Below, piece after piece: positions 23,852-56,400 of a DNA stretch of 64,000 nt (positions are counted from its first letter, which is position 1; every line of letters starts with the position of its first letter). The notes under the pieces were generated by a model. The model was not told where the DNA came from, did no database searches, and saw only the letters and a program-made list of their open reading frames with translations. The DNA comes from Macrostomum lignano. Taxonomy: Eukaryota. Location: NCBI GenBank assembly GCA_002269645.1, contig NIVC01002260.1, positions 79,386-143,385 on the forward strand. The letters run 5' to 3'. Made by a program: the position numbers and the translations under genes.

Positions 23852-23858
23852 CCATCTA

Positions 23859-31250: not shown

Positions 31251-34200
31251 ATGCGTCTGACGGTGCTGCTTCTGCTCTCCGTTGTGGTGCTTCTGGCTCT
31301 CACTAGCGATGTTAGCGACGCCCGAAGATCGAAGCCGTGAGTATAGACCGAATTAGCTTTGCCAGTTACACTACTTAAAGCAGGCTAGTGTCTCAACTTG
31401 CTTGGATCAAGTTTGCTCATGTCGGCTTTCGCGAATAAATTTTCAGTCGCTGGGCCAGACGATGTTTTCGAAAGCTCGGAAAGACGGTGAAGCGTCTGAA
31501 AAAGCTGGCGAAGATCAGGAAGATCCGCGCTAGGAGGGCCAAAAGGTCCTGGGCAAAGCGCATGGTCGCATGTGAGTGCAGTCCCTAATGTATCTGTGCA
31601 GTGCATTGTCTATGGAACAAACTGTAACAAGCGAATGATTCCCGGCTCGATGCTCGACTTTCAGCCATCAAAAAGTGCGGTCGGAGGCGCTGCGGGAGGC
31701 GGCAGCGATGCGTCGTTCGGCTATCCAGGAGGAAGATTGGCCGAATCTCCCGCCGAATCGCCCGGTTACGACGCCGCTACCGCAAGAAGAAGGCCAAGAT
31801 CAATCGAAAGTTTCGAGCTGCCATTCGCCGCAGCTTGAAACGAGTGAAAACGGCGGCCGGTCGCAAAGCGCTCTCCAGCAAAAAGTCCAAGGCCAGAAAG
31901 GTTGTCAACAAGAGGAAGAAAAAGCTTCGCAGGCGAACTAGAAAACGACTGGTATCCCTGAAGCGGAAATTGCGCCGGGCTCGACGAGGGTCGAAGAGGT
32001 GCGTGTCCAGGAGACGCCGCAGCTCGCGAAGGAGACGTGGTGAGTATTCACTTTGTCGGCTGTATGAAAATACGGTGCAGTCTATGTGGCCCAATTCATA
32101 AAAAACATCGCTTTTACTTCCGATCCTACAGGCGTGCGGTGCGGCCGAAGACGCTGCAGCATTCGTCAGCGATGCGTCGCCCGACGATCCAGAAGACGAA
32201 TCCGACGAATCCGCCGCCGAATCTCCAAGCTGGGACGATCGTATCGCAAGAAGCGGGCTAAAATTAGCCGCAAGTTGCGCGCCGCCATTCGCCGCAGCTC
32301 TCGACGCGTCAAATCGCTGGCCGCATGCCAAAGGCTCTCCAAGAAGCGATCCAAGATCAGAAGGGCAGCCAATAAGCGAGTAAAGAAAGTTCGCAGGCGT
32401 TTTAGAAAGCGACTGGTATCCTTGAGACGCCGACTGAGAAGAGCACGAAGAGGATCAAGACGTTGCGTGTCTCGAAGGAGAAGACGCGGTAAGCCATGGA
32501 ATCTTTTTCGAGTAATAGACTAAAGTCACACACAGACACACATATATATATTTGCTCCTAAAGGTGTTCAATGTGGCCGAAGACGCTGCGGAAGACGTCA
32601 GCGATGCATTTCCCGACGATCGAGCAGAAGAATCCGCCGAATCCGAAACCGAATCTCCAAGGTAAGACGATCCTATCGAAAGAGACAGGCCAAAATCAGC
32701 CGAAAATTCCGCGCCGCCATTCGCCGGTATTCGCGATCGGTAAAGTCAGCAGCAGCACGTCAAAAACAAGCCAAAAAGAGGGCTAAGGCCAGAAAAATTG
32801 TCCGCAAGCGAACTAGAAAGCTTCGAAATCAAACTAAAAGAAGACTGCGATCTCTGAAGCGCAAATTGAGTAGAGCTCGGCGACAATCAAGAAGGTGCGT
32901 TTCACGAAGACTAATTAGATCCAGAAAAAGACGCTCCTTGAAACGCCGTGCCAACCAAAGAAGACGCTCAGCGAGAAGACGTGCCAACCGAAAGAGACGT
33001 GGCAGCAAGAGACGATCGAGGAGAAGCCGAAGACGTGCCAACCGAAAGAGACGTGGCAGCAAGAGACGATCGAGGAGAAGCCGAAGACGTGCCAACCGAA
33101 AGAGACGTGGCAGCAAGAGACGATCGAGGAGAAGCCGAAGACGCGCCAACCGAAAGAGACGTGGCAGCAAGAGACGATCTAGAAGAAGCCGAAGACGTGC
33201 GAACCGAAAGAGACGTGGCAGCAAGAGACGATCTAGGAGAAGCCGAAGACGTGCCACCCGAAGAAGTCGAAGAGCGAGAAGACGCGCCAACCGAAAGAGA
33301 CGTGGCAGCAAGAGACGATCGAGGAGAAGCCGAAGACGTGCCACCCGAAGAAGTCGAAGAGCGAGAAGACGCGCCAACCGAAAGAGACGTGGCAGCAAGA
33401 GACGATCTAGGAGAAGCCGAAGACGTGCCACCCGAAGAAGTCGAAGAGCGAGAAGACGCGCCAACCGAAAGAGACGTGGCAGCAAGAGACGATCTAGGAG
33501 AAGCCGAAGACGTGCCACCCGAAGAAGTCGAAGAGCGAGAAGACGCGCCAACCGAAAGAGACGTGGCAGCAAGAGACGATCGAGGAGAAGCCGAAGACGT
33601 GCCACCCGAAGAAGTCGAAGAGCGAGAAGACGCGCCAACCGAAAGAGACGTGGCAGCAAGAGGCGACCTAGAAGAAGAAGACGTGCGACCCGAAGAAGTC
33701 GAAGAGCGAGAAGACGCGCCAACCGAAAGAGACGTGGCAGTAGGAGACGATCTAGAAGAAGCAGAAAACGTGCCACTCGAAGAAGTCGAAGAGCGAGAAG
33801 ACGCGCCAACCGAAAGAGACGTGGCAGCAAGAGACGATTAAGGAGAAGCCGAAGACGTGCCAACCGAAAGAGACGTGGCAGCAAGAGACGATCTAGGAGA
33901 AGCCGAAGACGTGCCACCCGAAGAAGTCGAAGAGCGAGAAGACGCGCCAACCGAAAGAGACGTGGCAGCAAGAGACGATCGAGGAGAAGCCGAAGACGTG
34001 CCACCCGAAGAAGTCGAAGAGCGAGAAGACGCGCCAACCGAAAGAGACGTGGCAGCAAGAGGCGACCTAGAAGAAGAAGACGTGCGACCCGAAGAAGTCG
34101 AAGAGCGAGAAGACGCGCCAACCGAAAGAGACGTGGCAGCAAGAGACGATCTAGGAGAAGCCGAAGACGTGCCACCCGAAGAAGTCGAAGAGCGAGAAGA

Positions 34201-37200
34201 CGCGCCAACCGAAAGAGACGTGGCAGCAAGAGACGACCTAGAAGAAGAAGACGTGCGACCCGAAGAAGTCAAAGAGCGAGAAGACGCGCCAACCGAAAGA
34301 GACGTGGCAGCAAGAGACGATCGAGGAGAAGCCGAAGACGTGCCACCCGAAGAAGTCGAAGAGCGAGAAGACGCGCCAACCGAAAGAGACGTGGCACCAA
34401 GAGACGATCGAGGAGAAGCCGAAGACGTGCCACCCGAAGAAGTCGAAGAGCGAGAAGACGCGCCAACCGAAAGAGACGTGGCAGCAAGAGACGATCTAGG
34501 AGAAGCCGAAGACGTGCCACCCGAAGAAGTCGAAGAGCGAGAAGACGCGCCAACCGAAAGAGACGTGGCAGCAAGAGACGATCGAGGAGAAGCCGAAGAC
34601 GTGCCACCCGAAGAAGTCGAAGAGCGAGAAGACGCGCCAACCGAAAGAGACGTGGCAGCAAGAGGCGACCTAGAAGAAGAAGACGTGCGACCCGAAGAAG
34701 TCGAAGAGCGAGAAGACGCGCCAACCGAAAGAGACGTGGCAGTAGGAGACGATCTAGAAGAAGCAGAAAACGTGCCACTCGAAGAAGTCGAAGAGCGAGA
34801 AGACGCGCCAACCGAAAGACACGTGGCAGCAAGAGACGATTAAGGAGAAGCCGAAGACGTGCCAACCGAAAGAGACGTGGCAGCAAGAGACGATCTAGGA
34901 GAAGCCGAAGACGTGCCACCCGAAGAAGTCGAAGAGCGAGAAGACGCGCCAACCGAAAGAGACGTGGCAGCAAGAGACGATCGAGGAGAAGCCGAAGACG
35001 TGCCACCCGAAGAAGTCGAAGAGCGAGAAGACGCGCCAACCGAAAGAGACGTGGCAGCAAGAGGCGACCTAGAAGAAGAAGACGTGCGACCCGAAGAAGT
35101 CGAAGAGCGAGAAGACGTGCCAACCGAAAGAGACGTGGCAGCAAGAGACGATCGAGGAGAAGCCGAAGACGTGCCAACCGAAAGAGACGTGGCAGCAAGA
35201 GACGATCGAGGAGAAGCCGAAGACGTGCCAACCGAAAGAGACGTGGCAGCAAGAGACGATCGAGGAGAAGCCGAAGACGCGCCAACCGAAAGAGACGTGG
35301 CAGCAAGAGACGATCTAGAAGAAGCCGAAGACGTGCGAACCGAAAGAGACGTGGCAGCAAGAGACGATCTAGGAGAAGCCGAAGACGTGCCACCCGAAGA
35401 AGTCGAAGAGCGAGAAGACGCGCCAACCGAAAGAGACGTGGCAGCAAGAGACGATCGAGGAGAAGCCGAAGACGTGCCACCCGAAGAAGTCGAAGAGCGA
35501 GAAGACGCGCCAACCGAAAGAGACGTGGCAGCAAGAGGCGACCTAGAAGAAGAAGACGTGCGACCCGAAGAAGTCGAAGAGCGAGAAGACGCGCCAACCG
35601 AAAGAGACGTGGCAGTAGGAGACGATCTAGAAGAAGCAGAAAACGTGCCACTCGAAGAAGTCGAAGAGCGAGAAGACGCGCCAACCGAAAGACACGTGGC
35701 AGCAAGAGACGATTAAGGAGAAGCCGAAGACGTGCCAACCGAAAGAGACGTGGCAGCAAGAGACGATCTAGGAGAAGCCGAAGACGTGCCACCCGAAGAA
35801 GTCGAAGAGCGAGAAGACGCGCCAACCGAAAGAGACGTGGCAGCAAGAGACGATCGAGGAGAAGCCGAAGACGTGCCACCCGAAGAAGTCGAAGAGCGAG
35901 AAGACGCGCCAACCGAAAGAGACGTGGCAGCAAGAGGCGACCTAGAAGAAGAAGACGTGCGACCCGAAGAAGTCGAAGAGCGAGAAGACGCGCCAACCGA
36001 AAGAGACGTGGCACCAAGAGACGATCGAGGAGAAGCCGAAGACGTGCCACCCGAAGAAGTCGAAGAGCGAGAAGACGCGCCAACCGAAAGAGACGTGGCA
36101 CCAAGAGACGATCGAGGAGAAGCCGAAGACGTGCCACCCGAAGAAGTCGAAGAGCGAGAAGACGCGCCAACCGAAAGAGACGTGGCAGCAAGAGACGATC
36201 TAGGAGAAGCCGAAGACGTGCCACCCGAAGAAGTCGAAGAGCGAGAAGACGCGCCAACCGAAAGAGACGTGGCAGCAAGAGACGATCGAGGAGAAGCCGA
36301 AGACGTGCCACCCGAAGAAGTCGAAGAGCGAGAAGACGCGCCAACCGAAAGAGACGTGGCAGTAGGAGACGATCTAGAAGAAGCAGAAAACGTGCCACTC
36401 GAAGAAGTCGAAGAGCGAGAAGACGCGCCAACCGAAAGAGACGTGGCAGCAAGAGACGATTAAGGAGAAGCCGAAGACGTGCCAACCGAAAGAGACGTGG
36501 CAGCAAGAGACGATCGAGGAGAAGCCGAAGACGTGCCACCCGAAGAAGTCGAAGAGCGAGAAGACGCGCCAACCGAAAGAGACGTGGCAGCAAGAGACGA
36601 TCTAGGAGAAGCCGAAGACGTGCCACCCGAAGAAGTCGAAGAGCGAGAAGACGCGCCAACCGAAAGAGACGTGGCAGCAAGAGACGATCGAGGAGAAGCC
36701 GAAGACGTGCCACCCGAAGAAGTCGAAGAGCGAGAAGACGCGCCAACCGAAAGAGACGTGGCAGCAAGAGGCGACCTAGAAGAAGAAGACGTGCGACCCG
36801 AAGAAGTCGAAGAGCGAGAAGACGCGCCAACCGAAAGAGACGTGGCAGTAGGAGACGATCTAGAAGAAGCAGAAAACGTGCCACTCGAAGAAGTCGAAGA
36901 GCGAGAAGACGCGCCAACCGAAAGAGACGTGGCAGCAAGAGACGATTAAGGAGAAGCCGAAGACGTGCCAACCGAAAGAGACGTGGCAGCAAGAGACGAT
37001 CTAGGAGAAGCCGAAGACGTGCCACCCGAAGAAGTCGAAGAGCGAGAAGACGCGCCAACCGAAAGAGACGTGGCAGCAAGAGACGATCGAGGAGAAGCCG
37101 AAGACGTGCCACCCGAAGAAGTCGAAGAGCGAGAAGACGCGCCAACCGAAAGAGACGTGGCAGCAAGAGACGATCTAGGAGAAGCCGAAGACGTGCCAAC

Positions 37201-40200
37201 CGAAAGAGACGTGGCAGCAAGAGACGATCGAGGAGAAGCCGAAGACGTGCCACCCGAAGAAGTCGAAGAGCGAGAAGACGCGCCAACCGAAAGAGACGTG
37301 GCAGCAAGAGGCGACCTAGAAGAAGAAGACGTGCGACCCGAAGAAGTCAAAGAGCGAGAAGACGCGCCAACCGAAAGAGACGTGGCAGCAAGAGACGATC
37401 GAGGAGAAGCCGAAGACGTGCCACCCGAAGAAGTCGAAGAGCGAGAAGACGCGCCAACCGAAAGAGACGTGGCAGCAAGAGGCGACCTAGAAGAAGAAGA
37501 CGTGCGACCCGAAGAAGTCGAAGAGCGAGAAGACGCGCCAACCGAAAGAGACGTGGCAGCAAGAGACGATCTAGGAGAAGCCGAAGACGTGCCAACCGAA
37601 AGAGACGTGGCAGCAAGAGACGATCTAGGAGAAGCCGAAGACGTGCCACCCGAAGAAGTCGAAGAGCGAGAAGACGCGCCAACCGAAAGAGACGTGGCAG
37701 CAAGAGACGATCTAGGAGAAGCCGAAGACGTGCCACCCGAAGAAGTCGAAGAGCGAGAAGACGCGCCAACCGAAAGAGACGTGGCAGCAAGAGACGATCG
37801 AGGAGAAGCCGAAGACGTGCCACCCGAAGAAGTCGAAGAGCGAGAAGACGCGCCAACCGAAAGAGACGTGGCAGCAAGAGGCGACCTAGAAGAAGAAGAC
37901 GTGCGACCCGAAGAAGTCGAAGAGCGAGAAGACGCGCCAACCGAAAGAGACGTGGCAGCAAGAGACGATCTAGGAGAAGCCGAAGACGTGCCACCCGAAG
38001 AAGTCGAAGAGCGAGAAGACGCGCCAACCGAAAGAGACGTGGCAGCAAGAGACGATTAAGGAGAAGCCGAAGACGTGCCAACCGAAAGAGACGTGGCAGC
38101 AAGAGACGATCTAGGAGAAGCCGAAGACGTGCCACCCGAAGAAGTCGAAGAGCGAGAAGACGCGCCAACCGAAAGAGAAGTGGCAGCAAGAGGCGACCTA
38201 GAAGAAGAAGACGTGCGACCCGAAGAAGTCAAAGAGCGAGAAGACGCGCCAACCGAAAGAGACGTGGCAGCAAGAGACGATCGAGGAGAAGCCGAAGACG
38301 TGCCACCCGAAGAAGTCGAAGAGCGAGAAGACGCGCCAACCGAAAGAGACGTGGCAGCAAGAGGCGACCTAGAAGAAAAAGACGTGCGACCCGAAGAAGT
38401 CGAAGAGCGAGAAGACGCGCCAACCGAAAGAGACGTGGCAGCAAGAGACGACCTAGAAGAAGAAGACGTGCGACCCGAAGAAGTCGAAGAGCGAGAAGAC
38501 GCGCCAACCGAAAGAGACGTGGCAGCAAGAGACGATCTAGGAGAAGCCGAAGACGTGCCAACCGAAAGAGACGTGGCAGCAAGAGACGATCGAGGAGAAG
38601 CCGAGGACGCGCCAACCGAAAGAGACGTGGCAGCAAGAGACGATCTAGGAGAAGCCGAAGACGTGCCACCCGAAGAAGTCGAAGAGCGAGAAGACGCGCC
38701 AACCGAAGAAGACGCTCAGCGAGAAGACGTGCCAACCGAAGAAGACGCTCAGCGAGACGTGCCAACAAAAGAAGACGCTCAATGAGAAGACGCGCCAATC
38801 GTAGAAAACCTGGCAGTAAGAGACGATCTAGAAAAAGCAGAAGACGTGCCAACCGACGAAGGCGTAGAGTGAGAAGACGTGCCAACCGAAGGAGACGTGG
38901 CGGTAAGAGACGATCTAGAAGAAGCAGAAGGCGCGCCAACAGAAGAAGACGCTGGTTGAGAAGACGTGCTGACAGAAGGCGAAAACGCATTTACAGACAT
39001 AAGAGACGGATTTCTAGGAGAAAAGGTAAATATTTAATTTGAATTCTGTTGTCTTTTACTTAGGAACTTATTGGTGATCCCGTAAAAAACTTTTGCAGCA
39101 CAAAGAAGGAAACGTAGATCCTTAACCAAATGTGGCAAATTCCGTTGCGGCCGAGGTACATCGTGCTTCCGTAGGTATCGCTATTCGTCTCGGGTTAGAG
39201 CAGCCGCCACCAGGGCTTTTAGAAGCCGATCAGCTAGCGCACTGAAGCAGTTCAAAGCCAAGAAGGCAAAGGCAAATGCAAAATTTAGTGCGTACTTGAG
39301 AAGGCGAGTTGCTTCCTACACAGGTAAGTTTCATTTACCTTTCATAAATTTATTTCCTTATTCAATATTTACTTTAATTGAAAAAATCTCAACACTCATG
39401 CTTCCAACATGGAAATCGACATGCAAATTAAATTAAAACAGTATTTGATTTTTAGGTAGAAGCAACAGACAGGCTTGTGAGCACTCTTCAATCTCTATCA
39501 GATGTCCCAAAGGATACAAAATTGACATTCTGTCCGGATTCTACGGCCGCACCAACAAGACTGTCTGCCGTAATAAGGCGATGAAGTCGACGCGCTGCTC
39601 AGCAGCATCGGCAACCCCGAGAGTGAAGAAGGCATGCCAGGGTAGGCGATCCTGCCGGGTCAGCAGCAGCAACTCCGTCTTTGGAGACCCCTGCGTTGGT
39701 ACATACAAGTATCTGAAGATTTCCTACAGGTGCAAGACGTACAAACCCACCCGAAAGTTGCTGAAGGAGCGAGCTGTCAGACGGCGCCGTCACCTTGCAG
39801 TTCTGGCCCGTTTGGCTAAGCGATATGCTCAGCGACAGGCCCGAATCAAGAGAGCGTTCATCAGATACCATTCAACAGTTGGTCGATGCGCTTTCGCCAG
39901 AGCCAGTTCAGGTATCTCTCTTCATTTTAAATTAAAACCAATTTTTTCCGATTAGAGTTGCTGGACTTGATGCATCAGTGATTTTCACCACATGAATATT
40001 TCAGCCATCTGCAAACGAATCAGCTGCGGAAGAAGACGCCGCTGTGTGCTAAGAAGAAAGCGCTTTATCGGCAAGGTGGCTTATCGCCCAGCCTGCGTCC
40101 GAAGACCGCGCCGTAAGTGATTGAATCATTTAGTATGTACTGCTTATAAAGTACAGCAGAACTCACTTTAGTCCGTCCCCATGCAACTCAACACCAGGAC

Positions 40201-43200
40201 GGTGCGGCAAGGCGGTTTGCAAGCGAGGCCAGCGATGCGTCATTCGCACAGTCAAGCGTCGAGTTGGTTCCGTCTTTAGAAGTGTGCGAATTGCCAGCTG
40301 TAGAAAAATTAAGTGTAAGTGCGAGCTAGTCTTAAAATATTTTAACAGGTAGTCGTAATATCTGTTGTTGTATGAATTTTTTCTGGTGTTCTTTGTAACA
40401 TTTTTTTTAAATTCGCATAACATGTTATCCATGATCATACACATTTGTTAATAATATTCCCACCTATTGCAGCTCCATGCGAAGTCGTTCGCTGTAGCCG
40501 CAGCAGGCGCTGTGTAGCTCGATTCCGCTTCTCCAAGTCCATCAGACTGAGGGCTTCCAGGCGGTACGGTCGCCTAGTTGCCAAGGCTAGGGCCAACTAC
40601 AATAAGCGCAAGGCTGCGTCCATCAAGCGCATCAACTCCTACCTGCGCAATTTTGCCAGAAAAACGCCGAGATACAAAAGTAAGTGAATATTTTGTACAG
40701 CAGACATCTTTTTGATTTTATGTATACTTGCCATTCTTCAATACTAGTCCATATTTCTGTGCCTGTCTTTACTTTAACTTCTGTACGAGTATCTTGATGC
40801 CTAGCAGCATTGCAAGAAAGTTAATATTTCGCCTGATACCAGATGCCAGCCCGAAACTTTCCTGTGAGCACGGATCGTCGAGCCTCAGCTGTACATCTGG
40901 CTCCACCATCGATGTGCTTTCCGCATTCTACGGCCGCACCTCCGGCAGCGTGTGCAAGAGAGGCCCCATCAAAACTACCAAATGCCGGTCGGGCAGCGCC
41001 AACAGTGCGGTCAGGCGCATTTGCCAGGGCAAATCCTCTTGCTCAGTTCGGGCCAGCAACTCCGTATTCGGCGATCCTTGCGTTGGAACATTCAAGTACA
41101 TGCGAATCAACTACCGATGCAAGTCCACCACCCCGACTGCAGCTGAAAGGAGAAAGAGACAAAAGAGGATCCAAAAGCACAGAAGCTACCTGGCGAAGCT
41201 GGGCAGCATGTACAGGCGTACCAGAGCATATCTGCAGCGCAAGCTGAAGCGAGCTACCGGCCTGAAAGCTCGATGTGTCAGGCGTAGACGAAGTGAGACG
41301 CTCTTTAAGCTAGAAATTTTAGCATACCGGATTTCTTTTATCACAAGCAAAACCGACACCTTCCACTCGCACAGGTGTTTGCCACAAACGACGATGCCGC
41401 AGAGGACGCGTCTGTGTTGCTCGCAGAGTTTCTCGCCGACGAGTTGTTGCCCGTTGCGTGAGGCCCCGGGGTACGTTTTGTATCATATTGTGTATCATTC
41501 AAGTTATAAAAAGAAATCAGGAAAATAGCTTTCAATTAACTCTGCTCATTCCAGCTCTATGCTCAAGAAAACGATGCGCGAGAGGCTCCCGCTGCGTTGT
41601 TCGTCGCACCATCTCAAAGGCTTTACGCAAATTCCGCTCGGTTAGGCGCAAGATGTACCGCCACTATCGTGCCAGAAGAAGCGCCCTGAAAGCTAGCTAC
41701 AGAAGAAGCAGGCGCAATGCCCGAGCGGCTTTCAAGCTGGCTGCCAAGGCCAGCAGGAAAGCAATTGCTAGAGCAATTAGGGCAAAGAATGCCAAGAAAG
41801 CAAAGAGCCTGAAGAAGGCGTGGAGCCGTCGCAGAGGTTTGCTAAAAGCAAGACTTCGCAGGCAGAGAAGAAAATACAAGAAAGCTAGTCACCGCCTCAG
41901 ACTGAGCTTCAGAAAGAGCTCTTCGCGTCTGTCTCGTCGTTACAAAAAGCTCAGATTTGTCAAGTATTCGGCTAGGTGTACCGTCAATCGATGCTACCGA
42001 GTCAGGTGCAAGTCAGGCTTCTCCTGCAGAAATGTTAGGCGATTCTCTAAGAAATTTGCTGCTTACATCCAGCAGAGACGCGTCTTGTCGAAGTCCTACC
42101 GCGCAGTCCGCCGAAGACTGCTCCGATCGCTGTATGCCAAGGCCCGCAAGGCCACAAAGCTTTTCCGAAAGCATCTGGCCAGACACCGCTCCGGCATTAG
42201 ACGCGCGAAGACCGCATCCGCTAGAAGATCACTTAGATCGGCTCTACGACGCAAGGTGAGACGTCTCCGACGTGCTAGACGTGCTGCTCATCTGAAGTAC
42301 CGACGTGCCGTGAAGCTTGCTAGAAGAAACTACCAGCTGAGGCGCAAGGCGCTGCGTAGAAAGCATGCAAATAAATCGGCTTTCAAGAACCGAGTCAGGA
42401 CTGTAGCTCGTTGCATCCGCAGAGTGAGAAGTAAGCTGCTTTGTTGACTGAAAATCATACATTTTTAAACAAGAGCAGTAACAGACCTCTCATTCGCAAT
42501 TTCTGACTTTGCTTTCAGGATCTTGCAAGAATGTCAAGTGTTCAGCCGGCAAGCGTTGCGTCTCGACTGTTGTTTCTCGCAGATGGTTCAGGCGGTACAG
42601 GCGAAGTCTGAAGAGAGGCAACAGACGAAAACGCTCTCGTCTAGTGCGGTCTATTCGGAAGCTTCGTTATCTCCGCAGGCAGTACAGAAGACGTTTGAAC
42701 CGTCGTAGGAGGCGTGCCATCAAATCATTTAGACGCTGGTTTGGACGCGCCGTTAGGCGTCTTGGCGGAAAGAGGCGTTACAGAAGGAGGGCTGGAAGAC
42801 GCAGTCGCAAATCCGGGTCCCGTTCTGCTCGACGAAACAGAGGAGCTGGATCGTTCCTCTGGGGCAGGTACAGACGTGCCGCTCGCCGGTACCGAAGAAA
42901 GTTTAGGAAGACCATTCGAAGGGTTTCTAAGCGCAGACTGAAGAAATACGCTAAATCGAAGAAGCGTGCCCGAAAGTCAGTTTTCAGAAGGTTCAAAAGA
43001 AATGCGCGAAAGTTTGCACGTCGCGTTCGTTTCCTGAAGAGACGAGTCGCGAAGCAGTTCCGACAGCTAAAGTCGGCCTACAAGAGAGGTAAGAAAGCAA
43101 CAGCTGCCGACTGGAAGAAGCTGAAGAAGAAGATCTTGAGAAGATACAAAAAGATCAAAAAAGCCTACAGAAAGATGTTGAAGCGAGCAGTTGTTTCCTA

Positions 43201-45136
43201 CTACAAACGGAGGGTTAATGTCGTGAGATCATTGAAGAAACGGCTAAGAAAGTTCAAGCGGAGACCAAGAAGCTTCAGAAGACGCTACACACGCCGAGCC
43301 ATCTGCGTTGCAGTAAATCCATGCCGGAGAAAGCGTTGTAGTCGAGGGTTTATCTGCCGGGTGCGAAAGATCAAAGCAAAAAGTGGCCGAACCAGATCTG
43401 TCGCTCGATGCGAGAAGAAAGCCAGTAAGTACTCGTACTTTTTAATAACTTTAAATTTTCTGTCAAAAGTCATGGATTTTTTGCAACTTTCTCAGTCTAT
43501 ATACAGACCTACAAAGAGTAAAGCATCAAATTTCAGACAAGTGCAGCAAGGTGAACTGTTCCAAGGGCAAGCGATGCATCGTCAGGCGGGTGTCGACTCG
43601 TACTTTCAAAGGTTTCCGCTGGTTTGCCAGGGCAAACCGTAGACGCTTCAGGCGCAAGGCTCGACGACTTTTCAAACGTCTCCGCAACAAGAGGCGAAGA
43701 TTCGCGAGGCGAGTCGTAAAGAAGTACAAAAAGGTGCGCAAGTCTCTCAGGAAGCGTCTCCGCGGTCGGAAGCTCGCTAGGCGTGTCAAAGCCGTAAAAC
43801 GCTCTGTGAGGCGAAAACTGCGAAGATTCCGAAACCGATCGCGGAGGTCTTTCCGTCGACGGAGAGCCGCGCTGAAACGGCGATTTAGAAGCGCTGTGAG
43901 GCGTTTCTCCGCACGATACTTGAGCTACCGGAGGCGCTACAAGACCCGTGCAATTTGTGTCAAGAGGCTAAAAAGTGAGTTGAAAGCATTATATTTGATT
44001 AGATAGGATTTTTATTTTAATGTTTGCTGAAATTGCAGCAAGTATATCTAGATACGATATGTAATACGATCGATGATACACATGATAAAGTGCTTCCAAA
44101 TAAACGACATGTTTGTTGTAAATATTTCAGTAATATTTTTATTACTATTGTATTCATTTCAGACCCTTGCAGCAAGAAACGCTGTCGAAAAGGCACAAGG
44201 TGCGTTGTTAGAAGAAAGCAGTCCAGGCTTCAGAAGAAATTCATCAGAATCGCAAAACGCCAAATCAAGAAGTTCGTATCAGTCCGGCGTCGGTTGAGTA
44301 AGCTGCGTCGTCGCAAGCGCAAAGTCGCCGTTCGCAAACTGACTCGCAAACTCAAACGGAAGCTGAGAAAGCTGCACAGACTATACAGAAGACGCGGCGC
44401 TTTCCAACGAAGCCGAAAGCTCGTGGCTCGCTGCTCAAGCGTGAGGAGAAGAACCCGTCGCATTTCCTGGAGAAGGAGAGTCTATCGCTTTTCAAGGAGG
44501 GTTCGTCGACGCGTCTCAAAGAGAGCCCGCCGTGTATCTCGGAATGTTCGACGTTTTTGGGGTAAATCTCGTCGCTTTTCTAGGAGAGTTCGTCGACGCG
44601 TCTCAGGGAGAGTTCGTCGACGCGTCTCAGGGAGAGTTCGTCGTGCCTCAAAGAAAGTCCGTCGCTTCTGGGGTAAAGCTCGTCGCTTTTCAAGGAGAGT
44701 TCGTCGACGCGTCTCAAGGAGAGCTCGCCGTGTATCTCGGAAGGTTCGACGTTTTTGGGGTAAATCTCGTCGCTTTTCAAGGAGAGTTCGTCGACGCGTC
44801 TCAGGGAGAGTTCGTCGTGCCTCAAAGAAAGTCCGTCGCTTCTGGGGTAAATCTCGTCGCTTTTCAAGGAGACTTCGTCGACGCGTCTCAAGGAGAGCTC
44901 GCCGTGTATCTCGGAAGGTTCGACGTTTTTGGGGTAAATCTCGTCGCTTTTCAAGGAGACTTCGTCGACGCGTCTCAAGGAGAGTTCGTCGCCGCGTCTC
45001 AAGGAGAGTTCGTCGACGCGTCTCAAGGAGAGTTCGTCGACGCGTCTCAAGGAGAGTTCGTCGCCGCGTCTCAAGGAGAGTTCGTCGGCGCGTCTCAAGA
45101 AGGTCAAGAAAGAGCGGCAGATCCAGGAGGCGATGA
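31251..45136 (+). CDS. Gene A: giant secreted Arg/Lys-rich protein (about 4085 aa) with 14 FOLN-like cysteine modules, 2 SUEL/rhamnose-binding lectin domains and a long protamine-like repeat
   Basis: Signal peptide MRLTVLLLLSVVVLLALTSDVSDA. Exons 31251-31336, 31447-31571, 31665-32039, 32132-32488, 32564-39025, 39099-39323, 39456-39911, 40005-40112, 40198-40314, 40473-40679, 40843-41292, 41375-41470, 41555-42430, 42519-43424, 43537-43974, 44163-45136 join GT-AG in frame (12258 nt); AATAAA at 45217. Confidence 0.85.
32950..38800 (+). repeat. Coding tandem repeat in gene A (54, 84 and 87 bp units encoding RRRANRKRRGSKRRSRRS with or without RRRATRRSRRA)
   Basis: Stop-free Arg frame across the array; all unit variants are multiples of 3. 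Confidence 0.95.
39473..39733 (+). other. SUEL/Gal_lectin (rhamnose-binding lectin) domain 1 of gene A
   Basis: ACEHSSISIRC...FYGR...C...C...CQGRRSCRV...NSVFGDPCVGTYKYLKISYRC matches family motifs (ACE, YGR, FGDPC, KYL). Confidence 0.92.
40860..41120 (+). other. SUEL/Gal_lectin domain 2 of gene A
   Basis: SCEHGSSSLSC...AFYGR...CQGKSSCSV...NSVFGDPCVGTFKYMRINYRC. Confidence 0.92.
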
Positions 45137-47094: not shown

Positions 47095-47740
47095 CTAAGC
47101 TACTGAGCTAGCTGCTGAGCTGCTGAGCTACTGAGCTACTGAGCTAGCTACTGAGCTACTGAGCTAGCTACTGAGCTACTGAGCTAGCTACTGAGCTACT
47201 GAGCTAGCTACTGAGCTAGCTACTGAGCTACTGAGCTAGCTACTGAGCTACTGAGCTACTGAGCTAGCTATTGAGCTACTGAGCTAGCTACTGAGCTACT
47301 GAGCTAGCTACTGAGCTACTGAGCTAGCTACTGAGCTACCGAGCTACTGAGCTAGCTACTGAGCTACTGAGCTACTGAGCTAGCTACTGAGCTACTTTGC
47401 TAGCTACTGAGCTACTGAGCTACTGAGATACTGAGCTACTGAGATACTGAGCTACTGAGATACTGAGCTACTGAGATACTGAGTTACTGAGATACTGAGC
47501 TACTGAGCTACTTAGCTAGCTACTGAGCTACTGAGCTACTGAGCTACTGAGCTACTGAGCTACTTAGCTAGCTACTGAGCTACTGAGCTACTGAGCTACT
47601 TAGCTAGCTACTGAGCTACTGAGCTACTGAGCTACTTAGCTAGCTACTGAGCTAGCTGCTGAGCTACTGAGCTTCTGAGCAACTGAGCTAGCTGCTGAGC
47701 TACTGAGCTTCTGAGCTACTGAGCTGCTGAGCTAGCTACT
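47095..47740. repeat. Simple repeat, 8/12 bp units gagctact and gagctagctact
   Basis: Direct reiteration. Confidence 0.95.
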
Positions 47741-48112
47741 GTCGATTAGTGCTAAAAAGCGGAATACTGCTAGTGCAGCGTCATTCTACTTGAGTTGGCC
47801 ACGAGTCTGGGCTGAGAGCCCACTCAGAACCACTGTGATGTAAATGCTTTCAGAGCGAGTGGAAGAGCTCGAGAGTTGCGGGTTTAGTGATCGTTGAGTT
47901 TTGAACAAGAATCATTCACTACCATCGGATATTCATTGAAGCGATTGGTTAATTCACCTCATGATTTCTGAGCCTAATTATTTTAAGCCCAGCCTTAGGT
48001 GCTGATAAGCGACAATCAGAAATTTTATGTAACATCAGTGGCGTACGTGACAGGAGCTCAACTTTGGCCACCTCTGGGACGAAGCAGCTACTGGCTTGAG
48101 ACAGGTCGAAAC

Positions 48113-49045: not shown

Positions 49046-49626
49046 CAGCAGATATTTGCGCCCCTTGGGCCGGGGTTGCGGCCCCTTTAATACGCCACTG
49101 ACGCACAGTCGTGCTCGGTTGAAAATGGTGTTGCATGGCGAAGTCGCCACCTGGTCTGTAATCTGCATGCAGGGACCGCTGGTAGCGACCTGAGGACAAG
49201 ACAGTTGGTTTCTTGGAAAATGTCCCTAAAGTCTCAGATTGCCAGGAGAGCACACATGACTAATTTAGATCTGATAGCGACTAAACTATATTTTTTTACA
49301 TCCAGTCTGCCCTGTTGCTAAGTGTATTTCTTTCAAATCTTTATTTGTGAGGAGATTGATTTCATATTATTATTATATTTTCTGTTATGTAAAGCTTAAA
49401 TATTTTTTGTTTAAATGCCTTTGACCTTCTCCTCTTATCAAGCTCAGCTAAGGCATTGGATTGATATGCATGTCTGCATGTGCGCCATCGACTCCACACA
49501 CCTGCATACCATTGGATTTGGACAAAGCTGATTTTGTCCGGGTAACCACGTGCGTTTGCTTTACATGGTTTTACATACCTGAATTTCCACATGGACAAAC
49601 AGATTCAGTTTTCATTGACTGGCTGA

Positions 49627-53424: not shown

Positions 53425-56400
53425 ATGCGTCTCACAGTGCTGTTTCTTCTTTCTGTTTGTCTTTTTCTTGCGCTAACCAGCGACGTTGGAGAGTCCTGGG
53501 GGTGAGTTTGAGTCATATTTTTGTCTTCGAATCATTCCTGCCCTTATTTTTAACAGCAGGCTTTTTCAATTAGCGTTGAAGGTGCTGAACAATCCTAACG
53601 CCTTTTTTCCACTCGCTTTCAGATGCGGATGGGCGTGCAAACGCATGCGTCGCATCCGAGCGAGAGCCGCCAGGCTGAGGCGGCTGGCGATTCAGAGGGC
53701 CAGGGCCCTCAGGCGCCGCATCTTGCTGGCTCGGCGGAGAGCAGCCAGAGCTGCGGCAAGAGCGCGGGCCAGAGCCAGAGCTTGGGCTCGAGCCAGGGCC
53801 AGAGCTGCTGCTAGAGCCAGGGCCAGAGCCAGGGCCATTGCTAGAGCCAGGGCTAGAGCTTTAGCCAAACGGTTGGCAAGAGCCCGCGCAAGAGCTCGCG
53901 CAATTGCAAGAGCCAGAGCTAGAGCTTTGGCCAGACGTGTGGCAAGAGCACGCGCAAGAGCTCGCGCAATCGCTAGAGCCAAGGCTAAAGCTTTGGCCAG
54001 GCGTGTGGCAAGAGCACGCGCAAGAGCTCGCGCCAAGGCAAGGGCTTTGGCCAGAGCAGCGGCTAGAGCAGCGGCCAGAGCAAGGGCCAGAGCTAAAGCT
54101 CGTGCCCGGGCCATCGCCAGGCGGTTGGCAAAAGCACGAGCCAGAGCTAGAGCAATCGCTAGAGCCAGGGCTAGAGCTTTGGCCAGACGTTTGGCAAGAG
54201 CTCGCGCAAGAGCTCGCGCAATCGCCAAAGCCAGGGCTAGGGCTTTGGCCAAGGCAGCGGCGAGAGCAAGGGCCAGAGCCAGAGCTCGTGCCCGGGCCGT
54301 CGCCAGAGCCTTGGCACGTGCTAAAGCTAGAGCCCGGGCTAAGGCAAGAGCTGTGGCTAGAGCATTGGCTAGAGCAAGAGCCAGAACGAGAGCACTGGCC
54401 CGAGCAAAAGCCAGAGCCCTGGCCAGGGCAGTGGCCAGAGCCAAAGCTAGAGCAAGAGCCAGAGCTAAAGCATTGGCCAGAGCCAAAGCCCTAATTCGTG
54501 CCCGAGCCCGATCTTTGGCGGCGGCGGCGGCGAGAGTAAAAGCAAGAGCCACAGCCCGAGCGAGAGCCTGGGCCAGGAGACGAGCTCTAGCCCTGAAGCG
54601 AGCCAAAGCCACAGCGAGACGAAGAGCCAGAGCTCTGGCCAGGGCCGTCGCTAAAGCAAGTAGAAGAGCAAAAGCTTTAGCTAGAGCCAAGGCTAGAAGA
54701 GTGGCCAGAGCGGCGGCAAGAGCGGCGAAGAAGATTCGAGACTGGTTCCGAAGGCGGGCCAAGCGCGGAAGAATCATCAAGAGATCAATCTACCGTCGTG
54801 TGAAGCGGCTCAAAACCCGTTTTGTCAAGTTCGTCAAGCGTCTGTTCCGCAAATGCCCACGAGGATACAAGAAGCGTGGAAATCGTTGCTACCGCCTTTA
54901 CTGCCCGAAGCCGTACGTCCGCCGAGGCGCCCGGTGCGTTCGCTACTACCGAATCTACAAGCCCCGAAAATGGTGCCCCAAAGGTTTCCGTCGAAGAGGC
55001 AGCCGGTGCATCAAGCGCATGCGCATCATCTGCGCAGCTGGCTATCGAGTTTACCGCGGCAGATGTCACCTGGTCCGGTGCCGTCGTGGATTCATCAAGA
55101 TCGGTAGAAGCTGCCGCCGCAGCTGCAAGCCCGGATTCCGACTCCGTGGCCGTTTTTGCGTTCGCTATCGCTTCCGATGCCCCAAGAACTTTTATTACCA
55201 TCGAAGGCGCTGCGTCCGATTCCGCCGAGGATCGACAAGGTAATTTTTGAAACTGCGAGTAGCATAGCATTTGAAATTGTTGCAATGCAAACCTAAGATG
55301 CGCGTGCAATTTTTTACTGTAGATGCCCGAGAGGATACCGCAGGAGAGGCAGAAAGTGCTTGCGCACCGTTCGATCGTGCCCGCTTAACTACCGCCGCCG
55401 AGGCAGGCGGTGTGTCAAGCGCTGTGCAAGCGGCCGGGTGCCTCGGCGCATTCGCCGCGGAGTGATCAGGTGCGTTGTCGTCACGTCCAAGTGCCCACTC
55501 GGTTACAGTCTGCGACGCGTGCGACGCGGAAGGCGCTACAGGTACTTTCCTTTAGTAGCAAATGTGAATACAAGATACTTTAAGAACAAAATAAATACTA
55601 AGTATTACATCTGCTTCAGGTTCCGCTGCGTCATCAATGCTGGAAGATGTGCACGTGGATTCAGACGAGTCAAGCGATACAGACGTGGCTTTTCTTGCGT
55701 TCGCATTGTCTGCCCGAGACACTACAGGAAACGCGGATCTCGATGCGTCTACCGACCACCCAAGGGTGGCAGCCGAAGATGTCCGGCAGGTTACAAAAAG
55801 GTGCGAGGCGTCTGCAAGAAGCTGAACTGCCCGGCCGGCTACGTGCGCAGGGGATCGCGCTGTGTGCACACCAGGTGCCCCCGTTTCTACCGCCGAGTGG
55901 GCAGATTCTGTGCCCGGATACGCTTTGTTGGCAAATGCCCAAGAGGCTGGCGCAGGACTGGCCGTCTCTGCCGCAGACGTGTGTGCCCGAGCGGCTTCAA
56001 GAAAGTTGGTCGCTACTGCATGCGTAAGTCCTTAACATAAATTGCAGTTCTCACTAAAGATGCAGTCACTTGAGCACTGGGTAATGCAGATAACCCACAA
56101 CGCTTTAGCGATTTGAATCAAATAGAAATAGAATTGCGGCTTGCGATTTGCGGATATTTTATCCGACCGAACCAATTTTTCAATAAATATTTACAGGAAA
56201 ATCCTGTCCATCTGGATTTGTCCGACGTGGTCGGGCTTGCTACAGAGGTGAGTTGATCCAAGCTCCTAATTGATGAATGATTCTCAGTTTTTCGAGTAAA
56301 GCGCGCAGCGACAGTTATTAAATATTGTTTTAATATTAAAATTTTAGCCCGATGCGCTCGCGGCTTCAAAAAGATGGGAAGCGTGTGCATCAGTGAGTGA

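What the first reader, a model, noticed from the sequence alone, without database searches (positions are those of the whole stretch)
39099..41292. Lectin on a stalk: SUEL domains inserted inside the FOLN loop between two cationic arms
Seen: exon 39099-39323 gives C1-C3 (CGKFRCGRGTSC) plus a basic arm. The next exon gives SUEL, a returning basic arm and the missing C4 (TVGRC). The same split occurs at 40473-41292 (closing LKARCV) and in every gene B repeat (CGRRTCRRNQKC...SUEL...RRGSKRCV). Modules without SUEL have the same two arms joined directly. Inference: antiparallel coiled-coil stalks presenting a sugar-binding head, a domain-insertion architecture that linear domain annotation would miss.
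Basis: partly seen in the sequence, partly recalled or inferred. Interest (0 to 1): 0.88.

Follow-up and report, generated by a model that had tools for sequence, protein, structure and literature searches.

The report
Sugar-binding head on a cationic stalk
Two giant, extremely arginine-rich secreted proteins of the flatworm Macrostomum lignano are built from small four-cysteine clasps that close a long positively charged helical hairpin, and in some copies a galactose/rhamnose-binding lectin domain sits at the hairpin tip; peptides from both proteins are already present, unremarked, in published mass spectrometry of the worm's adhesive footprints.

Summary
Exons 39099-39323 and 39456-39911, and again 40473-40679 and 40843-41292, encode C-x4-C-x5-C, a basic arm, a full SUEL lectin domain (Pfam E about 1e-23), a second basic arm and one closing cysteine. 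Removing SUEL gives 123-130 aa sequences that align end to end with the 118-aa SUEL-less modules of the same gene.

AlphaFold2 models both forms confidently (pLDDT 89-91, pTM 0.70-0.71). Each is a beta clasp holding C3 and C4, two roughly 40-residue antiparallel helices, and SUEL or a short turn at the tip.

Three caveats apply:
- The "FOLN" label is a pattern resemblance only (best Pfam E=0.063).
- Every gene B copy carries a 1-nt deletion as assembled.
- The stalk is shown only in models.

The window is Macrostomum lignano. Gene A has 16 exons and encodes 4085 aa with a signal peptide, 44% Arg and net charge +2211. Gene B is its tandem paralogue. An exhaustive profile search of 1.84 billion proteins finds the module only in M. 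lignano.

Peptides from both genes occur in the footprint proteome of Wunderer et al. 2019. I propose multivalent lectin-tipped polycations acting as cohesive cross-linkers.

The nearest precedent is laminin L4, inserted between Cys3 and Cys4 of an EGF-like module. This is a new variant of a known kind.

The parts
31251..45136 (+). Gene A. It has 16 exons and encodes a 4085-aa secreted protein with signal peptide MRLTVLLLLSVVVLLALTSDVSDA. Composition is 44% Arg and 10% Lys, with only 8 Asp and 6 Glu (net charge +2211). It holds 14 four-cysteine modules.
   Evidence: The gene model has GT-AG introns throughout and no internal stop. Five published tryptic peptides map to it.
39099..39323 (+). 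Unit 1, first exon. It holds C1-C3 (CGKFRCGRGTSC, 39131-39166) and arm A (modelled helix 39188-39301).
   Evidence: Translation; AlphaFold2 helix 21-58.
39324..39455 (+). Phase-1 intron, placed 6 codons before the first SUEL cysteine. Unit 2 and the gene B units have an intron at the same position and phase. The SUEL-less modules have none.
39456..39911 (+). Unit 1, second exon. It holds the SUEL lectin domain (39476-39733), arm B (modelled helix 39752-39877) and the closing Cys C4 (39887-39889).
   Evidence: Pfam PF02140, E=2.8e-23. Foldseek matches SUL-I, CSL3 and latrophilin lectin domains at rmsd 1.1-1.6 A. Footprint peptides IDILSGFYGR and VSSSNSVFGDPCVGTYK map here.
40005..40112 (+). Short four-cysteine module with a 16-residue C3-C4 loop. 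One exon equals one module.
40198..40314 (+). Short four-cysteine module with a 20-residue C3-C4 loop. One exon equals one module.
40473..40679 (+). Unit 2, first exon. It holds C1-C3 (CEVVRCSRSRRC, 40478-40513) and arm A.
40843..41292 (+). Unit 2, second exon. It holds SUEL (40863-41120), arm B (41121-41273) and the closing Cys (41274-41276).
   Evidence: Pfam E=5.8e-23. Footprint peptides CTSGSTIDV[I/L]SAFYGR and ASNSVFGDPCVGTFK map here.
31665..32039 (+). SUEL-less module 1 (C1 to C4 at 31676-32002). The two arms are joined by a short turn. Modules 2 (exon 32132-32488) and 3 (start of exon 32564-39025) are alike.
   Evidence: Alignments. AlphaFold2 gives strand-helix-turn-helix-strand with pLDDT 90.6 and pTM 0.71.
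32975..38928 (+). An Arg-rich tandem-repeat tract inside exon 5, with units of 54 and 87 nt (18 and 29 aa: RRANRKRRGSKRRSRRSRRRATRRSRRA). It is the polycationic bulk of gene A.
53425..64000 (+). Gene B, a tandem paralogue that runs off the window. In order it has a paralogous signal peptide, an Ala/Arg-rich tract, CPxGYxRRGxxC repeats, two hemicentin-type VWA domains, short four-cysteine modules, and then the array of nested units.
   Evidence: Eight of nine published peptides of a 3863-aa, pI 12.1 protein map here.
60171..63696 (+). Gene B array of nested units, period about 929 bp. Exon pairs are 60171-60356/60452-60912, 61096-61284/61380-61840, 62025-62213/62309-62769 and 62954-63142/63236-63696. 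A fifth copy starts at 63881. Each second exon is 461 nt, with one missing base.
   Evidence: SUEL E=9.2e-20. An intact homologous unit is present in P0241.

Best explanation
**What it is**
- This is a lineage-specific extracellular module of Macrostomum lignano.
- A small four-cysteine beta clasp (C-x4-C-x5-C ... C), EGF- or FOLN-like in pattern, closes a loop of very variable length.
- In the 96-residue form, the loop folds into two roughly 40-residue Arg/Lys-rich helices running antiparallel. That makes a stalk about 6 nm long.
- In the nested form, a complete SUEL (galactose/rhamnose-binding) lectin domain sits at the turn, encoded together with a phase-1 intron.
- The sugar-contact residues of the SUEL head are intact.

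**Where it occurs**
- Many such modules are strung together with thousands of residues of Arg-rich repeat.
- They form two tandem paralogous secreted giants, gene A and gene B.

**Proposed mechanism (inferred)**
- The proteins act as multivalent cohesive cross-linkers in material the worm deposits on surfaces.
- The cationic hairpins and repeats bind polyanions such as sulfated or acidic glycans, glycocalyx and conditioned surfaces.
- The heads, held out on the stalks, bind galactose-terminated glycans. One candidate is the Gal-beta1,3-GalNAc that decorates adhesion protein Mlig-ap2.

**My probability for each step**
- Nested architecture: about 0.9 (shown directly by the sequence).
- Paired helical stalk: about 0.6 (models only).
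- Secretion and deposition in footprints: about 0.75 (signal peptide plus published peptides).
- Role as a cohesive component of temporary adhesion: about 0.35 (inference).
For: **Architecture**
- Every module has four cysteines (module 2 has one extra), and the exons of the short modules each delimit exactly C1 to C4.
- SUEL forms a single clean block between arms of matched length. SUEL-deleted units of 123-130 aa align end to end with the 118-aa modules.
- All nested units share an intron at the same position and phase.

**Fold**
- AlphaFold2 gives pLDDT 89.0 / pTM 0.70 for unit 1 and 90.6 / 0.71 for the SUEL-less module. The C3 and C4 strands lie adjacent.
- Conserved hydrophobic columns in the arms are spaced 4, 3, 4, 11, 4 and 11, 4.
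- The closest PDB shapes to the SUEL-less module are antiparallel coiled-coil hairpins.

**Head**
- It passes Pfam.
- Foldseek E=2e-10 to SUL-I, with matches also to latrophilin lectin domains and CSL3.
- The SUL-I rhamnose ligands Glu7, Asn71 and Asp76 (PMC10377782) align to identical residues in unit 1.

**Organism and distribution**
- M. lignano, from a 100%-identical hit.
- Only three proteins of 1.84 billion match the module profile, and all three are from M. lignano.

**Expression and secretion**
- Both genes start with a signal peptide.
- Dataset S2 of PMC6410801, sheet footprints_Trypsin_intact_1, holds 5 peptides of a 1639-aa, pI 12.48 lectin protein. All five map to gene A, four of them inside the two nested SUEL heads.
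- The same sheet holds 8 of 9 peptides of a 3863-aa, pI 12.13 protein that map to gene B.

**Context**
- In this species, adhesion depends on the polycationic protein Mlig-ap1 and the Gal-beta1,3-GalNAc-bearing Mlig-ap2. Heparin blocks attachment (PMC6410801).
Against: - No coordinates, disulfide map or experiment exists, so the stalk rests on AlphaFold2 with only 3-6 informative sequences.
- The helices carry +12 and +15 net charge with almost no acidic partners. They may therefore fold only at seawater ionic strength or on a polyanion.
- Heptad periodicity is significant in only 4 of the 9 sequences tested. Helix A of unit 1 has no significant hydrophobic moment.
- The clasp region of unit 1 has lower confidence (pLDDT 53-74).
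- The footprint samples also contain vitellogenin-like protein, actin, tubulin and ribosomal proteins. Presence there does not prove origin in the adhesive gland.
- The tissue of expression is unknown.
Confidence: 0.55

Rival explanations
1. Nested, but with no stalk. The arms are intrinsically disordered polycationic tethers. SUEL simply sits in a disulfide-closed floppy loop. Any helicity appears only on binding a polyanion, in a coacervate-type mechanism.
For: - The arms carry extreme net charge (+12 and +15) with almost no Asp or Glu.
- Periodicity is non-significant in 5 of the 9 sequences tested.
- Helix A of unit 1 has a hydrophobic moment at z = -0.1.
- The alignments behind the models are shallow.
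Against: - The arms reach pLDDT 91-98 and the models pTM 0.70-0.71, in two independent contexts.
- Arm lengths stay matched across paralogues that are only 30-40% identical.
- The conserved positions are the hydrophobic ones, at heptad-compatible spacing.
- The animal lives in seawater, which screens charge (my own knowledge).
Confidence: 0.2
2. The structure is the same but the job differs. The proteins belong to epidermal or rhabdite mucus, to egg cement or shell, or act as an antimicrobial agglutinin in which polycation plus lectin traps and kills microbes. On this reading they enter footprint preparations as bystanders.
For: - The footprint sheets are full of non-adhesive proteins.
- The authors did not flag these proteins.
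- Rhamnose-binding lectins agglutinate bacteria (PMC8350385).
- Galactose and PNA did not disturb attachment.
Against: - The design closely parallels the known cohesive proteins: the Lys/Arg-rich regions plus lectin of Mlig-ap1, and the ap3 polycations of other flatworms.
- The gene-B-like protein P0241 carries the VWD, TIL and EGF_CA repertoire typical of cohesive adhesive proteins.
- The peptides were not found in the stored parts of the pull-down or tail sheets, but those files were cut when stored.
Confidence: 0.3
3. There is no nesting. The reading is linear: a three-cysteine motif, a linker, SUEL, another linker. The "closing" Cys belongs to the next module or forms intermolecular bonds.
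For: - C4 lies only 4-16 residues before the next C1.
- Disulfide connectivity was not determined.
Against: - Phase-1 exons delimit exactly C1 to C4.
- The last module keeps its C4 although no module follows it. The first module has no nearby upstream Cys.
- AlphaFold2 pairs the C4 strand with the C3 strand.
- The closing motif RRARRGSKRCV is shared between SUEL-less and SUEL-bearing modules.
Confidence: 0.05
4. Artefact: a non-coding low-complexity repeat, or a pseudogene cluster.
For: - Every gene B copy is frameshifted as assembled.
- The composition is extremely biased.
Against: - Gene A gives a 12.3-kb spliced open reading frame across 16 exons with canonical splice sites.
- All repeat periods in exon 5 are multiples of 3.
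- Tryptic peptides from both genes appear in a published proteome.
- An intact gene-B-type unit exists in P0241.
Confidence: 0.02

Closest known systems
Laminin L4 (domain IV) inserted into a laminin-type EGF-like (LE) module; perlecan domain III has the same arrangement (from my own knowledge)
   Same: A globular, carbohydrate-binding-module-like domain is inserted between Cys3 and Cys4 of an EGF-like module whose first disulfides are 1-3 and 2-4 (PMC5338690). This is the same topological site as here.
   Different: - Laminin has no long helical stalk between the clasp and the insert.
- Its host module has 8 cysteines.
- Its insert is not a SUEL domain.
- There is no polycationic composition and no sequence relationship.
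SUEL / rhamnose-binding lectins (SUL-I, CSL3, latrophilin lectin domain)
   Same: The head is a bona fide member of this family. It has the Pfam domain, 8 cysteines, a matching fold at rmsd 1.1-1.6 A, and conserved Glu/Asn/Asp sugar ligands.
   Different: - The known lectins are tandem arrays joined by short linkers, or an N-terminal domain of a receptor.
- None of the public proteins whose sequences I read in full shows SUEL nested in a disulfide-closed loop on helical arms. I read six of the hits.
Flatworm cohesive adhesion proteins: Mlig-ap1 (Lys/Arg-rich regions with pI above 14, plus C-type lectin, vWD, C8, TIL and EGF) and the ap3 polycations of Minona and Theama
   Same: - They are giant secreted proteins with a signal peptide and huge Lys/Arg-rich low-complexity tracts.
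- They carry lectin and matrix domains, and Mlig-ap1 is from the same species.
- They are found in footprints, and their function is sensitive to polyanions.
   Different: - This is not Mlig-ap1 or Mlig-ap2. Their epitope peptides are absent from the window, and the domain sets differ (SUEL and VWA_4 here, against a C-type lectin there).
- Here the cationic parts are organised into cysteine-clasped modules.
- No expression or RNAi data exist for these genes.
Follistatin/osteonectin N-terminal EGF-like hairpin (FOLN, PF09289)
   Same: The motif C-x4-C-x2-G-x2-C-[VI] matches profile positions 1-12 of 22. Nine of the 14 gene A modules carry the Gly.
   Different: - The match is below the Pfam threshold.
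- No Kazal half follows.
- The CxC ending is absent.
- The loop is 13-248 residues instead of about 8.
- A PDB profile search finds no follistatin, SPARC or agrin.
Antiparallel coiled-coil stalks or towers (LSD1 tower, SMC/Rad50 and JetC arms, MacA hairpin)
   Same: The shape is the same: a two-helix antiparallel hairpin projecting from a base. TM-score normalised to the query is 0.4-0.6 over about 80-115 alignment columns.
   Different: - The matches are not significant (E of 0.33 or more).
- Those stalks are cytoplasmic or periplasmic, are not disulfide-clasped and are not polycationic.
- There is no homology.

Membership tests
SUEL / rhamnose-binding lectin domain (PF02140) | Profile match above Pfam's gathering score over the full domain | tested here: met
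   Scores are 82.5, 81.5 and 71.3 bits against a cut-off of 31.4, covering profile positions 1-80 of 80.
SUEL / rhamnose-binding lectin domain (PF02140) | Eight conserved cysteines and the YGR and (V)FGDPC..KY motifs | tested here: met
   (near-invariant columns).
SUEL / rhamnose-binding lectin domain (PF02140) | Alpha/beta lectin fold | tested here: met
   The AlphaFold2 head matches 5H4S, 2ZX0, 2JX9 and 6SKE at E=2e-10 to 1e-8 and rmsd 1.1-1.6 A.
SUEL / rhamnose-binding lectin domain (PF02140) | Sugar-contact residues (SUL-I Glu7, Asn71, Asp76) | tested here: met
   A gap-free alignment to SUL-I domain 1 places E, N and D at those positions. The ligand list comes from PMC10377782.
SUEL / rhamnose-binding lectin domain (PF02140) | Actual binding of galactose or rhamnose | not testable with these tools
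   This needs recombinant protein and a glycan array.
FOLN (follistatin/osteonectin-like EGF, PF09289) | Profile match above the gathering score | tested here: not met
   The best score is 13.9 bits (E=0.063) against a cut-off of 21.1. Only 1 of 9 short modules gives any match.
FOLN (follistatin/osteonectin-like EGF, PF09289) | Sequence relationship to solved FS-domain proteins (follistatin, SPARC, agrin) | tested here: not met
   A profile of 9 modules against PDB sequences gives no such hit at E up to 10.
FOLN (follistatin/osteonectin-like EGF, PF09289) | C-x4-C-x2-G-x2-C spacing and a beta hairpin with 1-3 and 2-4 disulfides | tested here: inconclusive
   The spacing is present in 14 of 14 modules and the Gly in 9 of 14. 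AlphaFold2 gives strands around C3 and C4. Connectivity could not be read because no coordinates were returned.
FOLN (follistatin/osteonectin-like EGF, PF09289) | Followed by a Kazal-like half, as in FS domains | tested here: not met
   No Kazal match appears in any Pfam scan.
Mlig-ap1 / Mlig-ap2 (M. lignano adhesion proteins) | Contains the published epitope or repeat peptides (SRKPRRKNRKSRKP, KNNKRRVRKARKNN, KSRKVN; TSRKSTGRTTRQKK, VNRETPKEPKKALS) | tested here: not met
   There are no occurrences in any of the six reading frames of the window.
Mlig-ap1 / Mlig-ap2 (M. lignano adhesion proteins) | Domain set (ap1: C-type lectin, vWD, C8, TIL, 17 EGF; ap2: LDL, TSP1, and 255- and 221-aa repeats) | tested here: not met
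   Genes A and B have SUEL, VWA_4 and four-cysteine modules. The gene-B-like P0241 has VWD, TIL, VWA, EGF_CA and fn2 but no C-type lectin.
Flatworm footprint or adhesive secretome (functional class, not a homology family) | Signal peptide and detection in footprint material | tested here: met
   Peptides in Dataset S2 of PMC6410801 map to both genes.
Flatworm footprint or adhesive secretome (functional class, not a homology family) | Expression in adhesive gland cells and an adhesion phenotype on knock-down | not testable with these tools
   No expression or RNAi data were found for these genes.

The most novel reading that the evidence does not exclude
- Genes A and B are undescribed third and fourth structural components of the M. 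lignano temporary adhesive.
- Their stalk-mounted SUEL heads dock onto the Gal-beta1,3-GalNAc glycans of the surface-bound Mlig-ap2.
- Their cysteine-clasped polycationic hairpins are a charge-gated element. They are folded and cohesive when paired with anionic partners, and they are displaced when the releasing gland secretes its small polyanion.
- The module would then be a dedicated lectin-plus-polycation cross-linker with no homologue outside Macrostomum.
Probability: 0.2. Interest if true: 0.85.

Novelty: new variant of a known kind. Interest (0 to 1): 0.66.

Why it matters
**For flatworm adhesion**
- The current two-protein model for M. lignano has no partner that reads the glycans on Mlig-ap2.
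- Two giant proteins that combine lectin heads with polycation are already present in the published footprint proteome.
- They are obvious and directly testable candidates for that role, through in situ hybridisation, RNAi and glycan binding.

**For protein architecture**
- A secreted protein with 44% arginine appears to be organised into disulfide-clasped helical hairpins rather than being structureless. That is unusual.
- It offers a simple design for biomimetic glues: a rigid cationic spacer with a glycan-binding tip.
- It is a clean example of exon-level domain insertion at the Cys3-Cys4 site also used by laminin L4.

**For annotation**
- Public gene models for this locus are fragmented or mis-spliced. 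One is named as an SR-matrix protein.
- Domain tables report only "SUEL".

Tried and rejected
1. **First homology search.** I searched with 555 aa of the finding region. It returned only tandem-SUEL lectins from Hydra, jellyfish, fish and echinoderms. The six I read in full were plain tandem arrays, so it told me nothing about the module.
2. **Early guesses about origin.** I considered a cnidarian nematocyst or echinoderm source. The 100%-identical M. lignano hit ruled these out.
3. **Are these Mlig-ap1 or Mlig-ap2?** I tested this and rejected it, because the epitope peptides are absent and the domains differ.
4. **FOLN membership.** I tested it with Pfam on nine modules and with a profile against PDB sequences. 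Neither gave support.
5. **Alignment for the AlphaFold2 run on unit 1.** Adding SUEL-less modules or arm-only rows misaligned them onto SUEL. Those alignments were discarded.
6. **Rejected submissions.** Each time one row contained residues not found as an exact stretch in the window: a splice-junction residue, or a piece too short to be matched. I fixed this by dropping those residues.
7. **Heptad and amphipathicity tests.** Fourier tests of heptad periodicity and helical-moment tests gave mixed results. They cannot decide the coiled-coil question on their own.
8. **Expression data.** Literature searches for expression of SUEL or arginine-rich genes in Macrostomum found none.
9. **Unused search.** I left the third word-index homology search unused, because the exhaustive profile search had already answered the distribution question.

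Full report
**1. What is in the sequence**

The window is eukaryotic, with short GT-AG introns. A PRP8 gene occupies roughly 5.2-19.7 kb on the + strand.

- Exon 39099-39323 encodes ..SLTKCGKFRCGRGTSC followed by a basic stretch.
- After a 132-nt phase-1 intron, exon 39456-39911 encodes a complete SUEL lectin domain, a second basic stretch and ..STVGRC.
- The same layout recurs on exons 40473-40679 and 40843-41292, closing with ..LKARCV.
- Two short one-exon modules lie between the two units: ICKRISCGRRRRC..ACV and RCGKAVCKRGQRC..SC.
- Pfam recognises only the SUEL domains (E=2.8e-23 and 5.8e-23).

**2. The gene**

Chaining the open frames through canonical splice sites gives a 16-exon model at 31251-45136 with no internal stop. 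All introns between module exons are phase 1.

The product is 4085 aa. It starts with a clear signal peptide (MRLTVLLLLSVVVLLALTSDVSDA). It is 44% Arg and 10% Lys, with only 8 Asp and 6 Glu, giving a net charge of +2211. Exon 5 alone (6.5 kb) is mostly 54- and 87-nt tandem repeats that encode RRANRKRRGSKRRSRRSRRRA-type units.

The protein contains 14 modules of the form C-x4-C-x5-C-x(n)-C, each with exactly one closing cysteine. The loop lengths n are 96, 96, 96, 196, 16, 20, 199, 13, 127, 128, 248, 17, 126 and 76. The two loops near 200 residues are the ones that carry SUEL and its 8 cysteines.

Several facts place the fourth cysteine in the module upstream of it:
- The exons of the short modules each delimit C1 to C4.
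- The last module keeps its C4 although nothing follows it.

A second gene starts at about 53.4 kb with a paralogous signal peptide. In order it carries:
- an Ala/Arg-rich tract;
- CPxGYxRRGxxC repeats;
- two hemicentin-type VWA domains;
- short four-cysteine modules;
- from 60.2 kb, a 929-bp tandem array of nested units (KCGRRTCRRNQKC .. SUEL .. RRARRGSKRCV) that runs off the window.

**3. Is it an insertion?**

Yes, on four grounds:
- Aligning the three SUEL-less 118-aa modules of gene A with the three kinds of nested unit puts SUEL in one uninterrupted block of about 95 columns. It sits between arms of about 50 residues each.
- Deleting SUEL in silico gives sequences of 123-130 aa that align end to end with the SUEL-less modules.
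- The gene B unit shares both the opening motif (KCGRR.CRR.QKCV.RRS.RRIR) and the closing motif (LRRARRGSKRCV.RRRR) with gene A module 1.
- All nested units carry a phase-1 intron six codons before the first SUEL cysteine, and the SUEL-less modules have none. This indicates one origin followed by duplication.

**4. A caveat on gene B**

All four complete second exons in the array are 461 nt, which is 2 mod 3. Each lacks one base relative to a 462-nt in-frame consensus, at three different sites. A fifth, partial copy has an extra base.

As assembled, every copy is therefore frameshifted between the SUEL domain and the closing cysteine, or at the end of SUEL. The copies otherwise differ by only a handful of substitutions and by some differences in the intron, which points to assembly indel errors. 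A public protein, UniProt A0A1I8I5M9 (P0241), contains an intact in-frame unit of the same type. Peptides spanning this region have been observed.

**5. Fold**

*Unit 1.* AlphaFold2 was run on an alignment of the three nested unit types plus 26 SUEL domains. It gave mean pLDDT 89.0 and pTM 0.70. The model has:
- strands 4-8 and 11-17 (C3 is residue 13);
- helix 21-58;
- the SUEL domain at 68-160;
- helix 165-206;
- strand 210-213 (C4 is residue 210).

The helices score pLDDT 91-98 and the clasp 53-74.

*SUEL-less module 1.* This gave pLDDT 90.6 and pTM 0.71. The layout is strand 11-16, helix 19-54, a six-residue turn, helix 61-105, and strand 107-112. The turn is exactly where SUEL sits in the nested units.

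*Structure comparison.*
- The head matches solved SUEL-type domains at E=2e-10 to 1e-8 and rmsd 1.1-1.6 A: SUL-I (5H4S), the latrophilin lectin domains and CSL3.
- The SUEL-less model has no significant match. Its closest shapes are antiparallel coiled-coil hairpins such as the LSD1 tower, JetC/SMC, Rad50 and MacA, with query-normalised TM-scores of 0.4-0.6.

*Sequence signals in the arms.*
- Conserved hydrophobic columns are spaced 4, 3, 4, 11, 4 and 11, 4, which is compatible with heptads.
- Whole-arm Fourier tests are significant in only some arms.
- Helix A of unit 1 is Ala-rich with no significant hydrophobic moment.

The stalk is therefore well supported by models but not proven. With +12 and +15 net charge on the two helices, folding may need seawater ionic strength or a polyanionic partner.

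**6. The head looks functional**

A gap-free alignment to SUL-I domain 1 places Glu, Asn and Asp of unit 1 at the positions of Glu7, Asn71 and Asp76. Those residues hydrogen-bond rhamnose in the crystal structure (PMC10377782). Unit 2 and the gene B unit keep the same motifs (CE.., N.VFGDPC).

**7. Is the clasp a FOLN domain?**

This is not demonstrated.
- The motif C-x4-C-x2-G-x2-C-[VI] resembles the first 12 of the 22 FOLN profile positions.
- Only one of nine short modules matches PF09289, and it is below threshold (E=0.063).
- A profile of the modules finds no follistatin, SPARC or agrin among PDB sequences.
- No Kazal half follows.

I call it an EGF- or FOLN-like four-cysteine clasp and do not file it as FOLN.

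**8. Organism and distribution**

A search with SUEL-free parts of both genes returned Macrostomum lignano proteins:
- P0122 is 100% identical over its match. It is a mis-predicted fragment of gene A named "Serine/arginine repetitive matrix protein 2".
- P0123 is PAA50029.1, BOX15_Mlig000911g8, and corresponds to part of gene B.

An exhaustive HMMER search with the SUEL-deleted module profile covered 1.84 billion representative proteins. It found three hits at E of 0.001 or better, and all three are M. lignano predictions from this locus or its paralogue.

One of them, P0241, continues after a nested unit into long-loop modules, CPxGY repeats, VWD, TIL, VWA, five EGF_CA domains and fn2. That is the domain repertoire typical of cohesive adhesive proteins. 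Public names mention only "SUEL-type lectin domain", so the nested architecture is indeed invisible to linear annotation.

**9. Evidence that the proteins are made and deposited**

Dataset S2 of Wunderer et al. 2019 (PMC6410801), sheet footprints_Trypsin_intact_1, lists two relevant entries:
- A 1639-aa, pI 12.48 "Galactose binding lectin domain" protein with five peptides. All five map to gene A with tryptic flanks, at 39521-39550, 39659-39709, 40890-40937, 41052-41096 and 42842-42868. Four of them lie inside the two nested SUEL heads of this finding.
- A 3863-aa, pI 12.13 protein with nine peptides, eight of which map to gene B. Peptides from the C-terminal part of P0241 are also listed.

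The paper does not discuss these proteins. The same sheets contain vitellogenin-like protein, actin, tubulin and ribosomal proteins, so presence in the sheet does not prove an origin in the adhesive gland.

**10. Mechanism proposed**

In M. lignano, attachment needs two proteins:
- Mlig-ap2, which binds the surface and carries Gal-beta1,3-GalNAc;
- Mlig-ap1, which is cohesive, has Lys/Arg-rich regions with pI above 14, and carries a C-type lectin.

Heparin and other polyanions block attachment, and cations block release. Other flatworms have separate "ap3" polycations, which were reported as not found in macrostomids (PMC9229212).

Genes A and B are not ap1 or ap2, but they combine the same two chemistries in one modular design. 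The most likely reading is a multivalent cohesive cross-linker:
- cationic hairpins and repeats bind polyanions;
- stalk-mounted heads bind galactose-terminated glycans.

The main rival is a role in mucus, egg cement or antimicrobial agglutination. The report that free galactose and PNA did not affect attachment counts against a simple lectin-dependent step. Multivalent binding is, however, often insensitive to monosaccharides (my own knowledge).

**11. Comparison with what is known, and novelty**

Insertion of a globular domain between Cys3 and Cys4 of an EGF-like module is established for laminin L4 (PMC5338690). Heads on antiparallel coiled-coil stalks are also known. Lectin-bearing polycationic cohesive proteins are known in this very animal.

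What appears to be new:
- the cysteine-clasped polycationic helical hairpin as a repeated extracellular module, with no homologue outside M. lignano in 1.84 billion representative proteins;
- SUEL nested at its tip;
- the two genes as unrecognised footprint-associated proteins.

I rate this a new variant of a known kind, of solid interest and readily testable.

Noticed in passing
window 60452-63696 (second exons of the gene B units): All four near-identical copies are 461 nt. Each is missing one base, at three different sites, relative to a 462-nt in-frame consensus. The fifth, partial copy (63881-) has an extra C. The pattern looks like indel errors in an assembled tandem array rather than decay.
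   Followed up: partly
window 32975-38928: About 6 kb of 54- and 87-nt tandem repeats lie inside one 6.5-kb exon and encode nearly pure Arg/Ser/Lys/Ala/Asn. The coding strand is extremely purine-rich (AT skew up to 0.75). All repeat periods are multiples of 3.
   Followed up: partly
PMC6410801 Dataset S2, sheet footprints_Trypsin_intact_1; maps to window 39521-42868 and 56883-63549: Published footprint mass spectrometry contains peptides of both giant lectin-polycation proteins (1639 aa at pI 12.48; 3863 aa at pI 12.13). The paper does not mention them.
   Followed up: yes
window 53425-53501 and 31251-31322: Genes A and B begin with near-identical signal peptides (MRLTVLFLLSVCLFLALTSDV and MRLTVLLLLSVVVLLALTSDV). 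They are therefore tandem paralogues about 22 kb apart.
   Followed up: partly
window 53600-54700: Gene B has an Ala/Arg-rich tract (ARARARA.., 186-nt repeat). It is open in several frames on both strands and has no Pfam match.
   Followed up: no
window 54800-56640: There are about 20 repeats of a basic CPxGYxRRGxxC motif in tandem. They have no Pfam match. The same repeats occur in M. lignano proteins P0121, P0123 and P0241.
   Followed up: no
window 56686-57283 and 58500-58991: Two hemicentin/VWA7-type VWA domains (VWA_4, GGGDCPE motif) lie inside gene B. Related basic VWA proteins of M. lignano are abundant in the same footprint and tail proteome sheets.
   Followed up: partly
window about 5200-19700 (+): This is a PRP8 spliceosome gene (PRO8NT, PROCN and U6-snRNA-binding domains). 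Its introns are packed with minisatellites that are open in several frames.
   Followed up: partly
window 23800-28500, 47100-51400: Long minisatellite arrays occupy the intergenic space, with periods of 8-28 nt. One stretch at 26-28 kb has a GC skew of -0.68.
   Followed up: no
public proteins P0122 (A0A1I8FTR7) and P0242 (A0A1I8FSQ9): Public gene predictions for this locus are mis-spliced or out of frame. One is named "Serine/arginine repetitive matrix protein 2". P0242 did not appear in the first word-index search, although long stretches of it are identical to the query. That search can therefore miss close relatives.
   Followed up: partly
gene A module 2, window 32132-32488: This module has one extra, unpaired cysteine in the middle of its loop (..KSLAACQRLS..). 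It is the only module with an odd cysteine count and is a possible site for an intermolecular disulfide.
   Followed up: no
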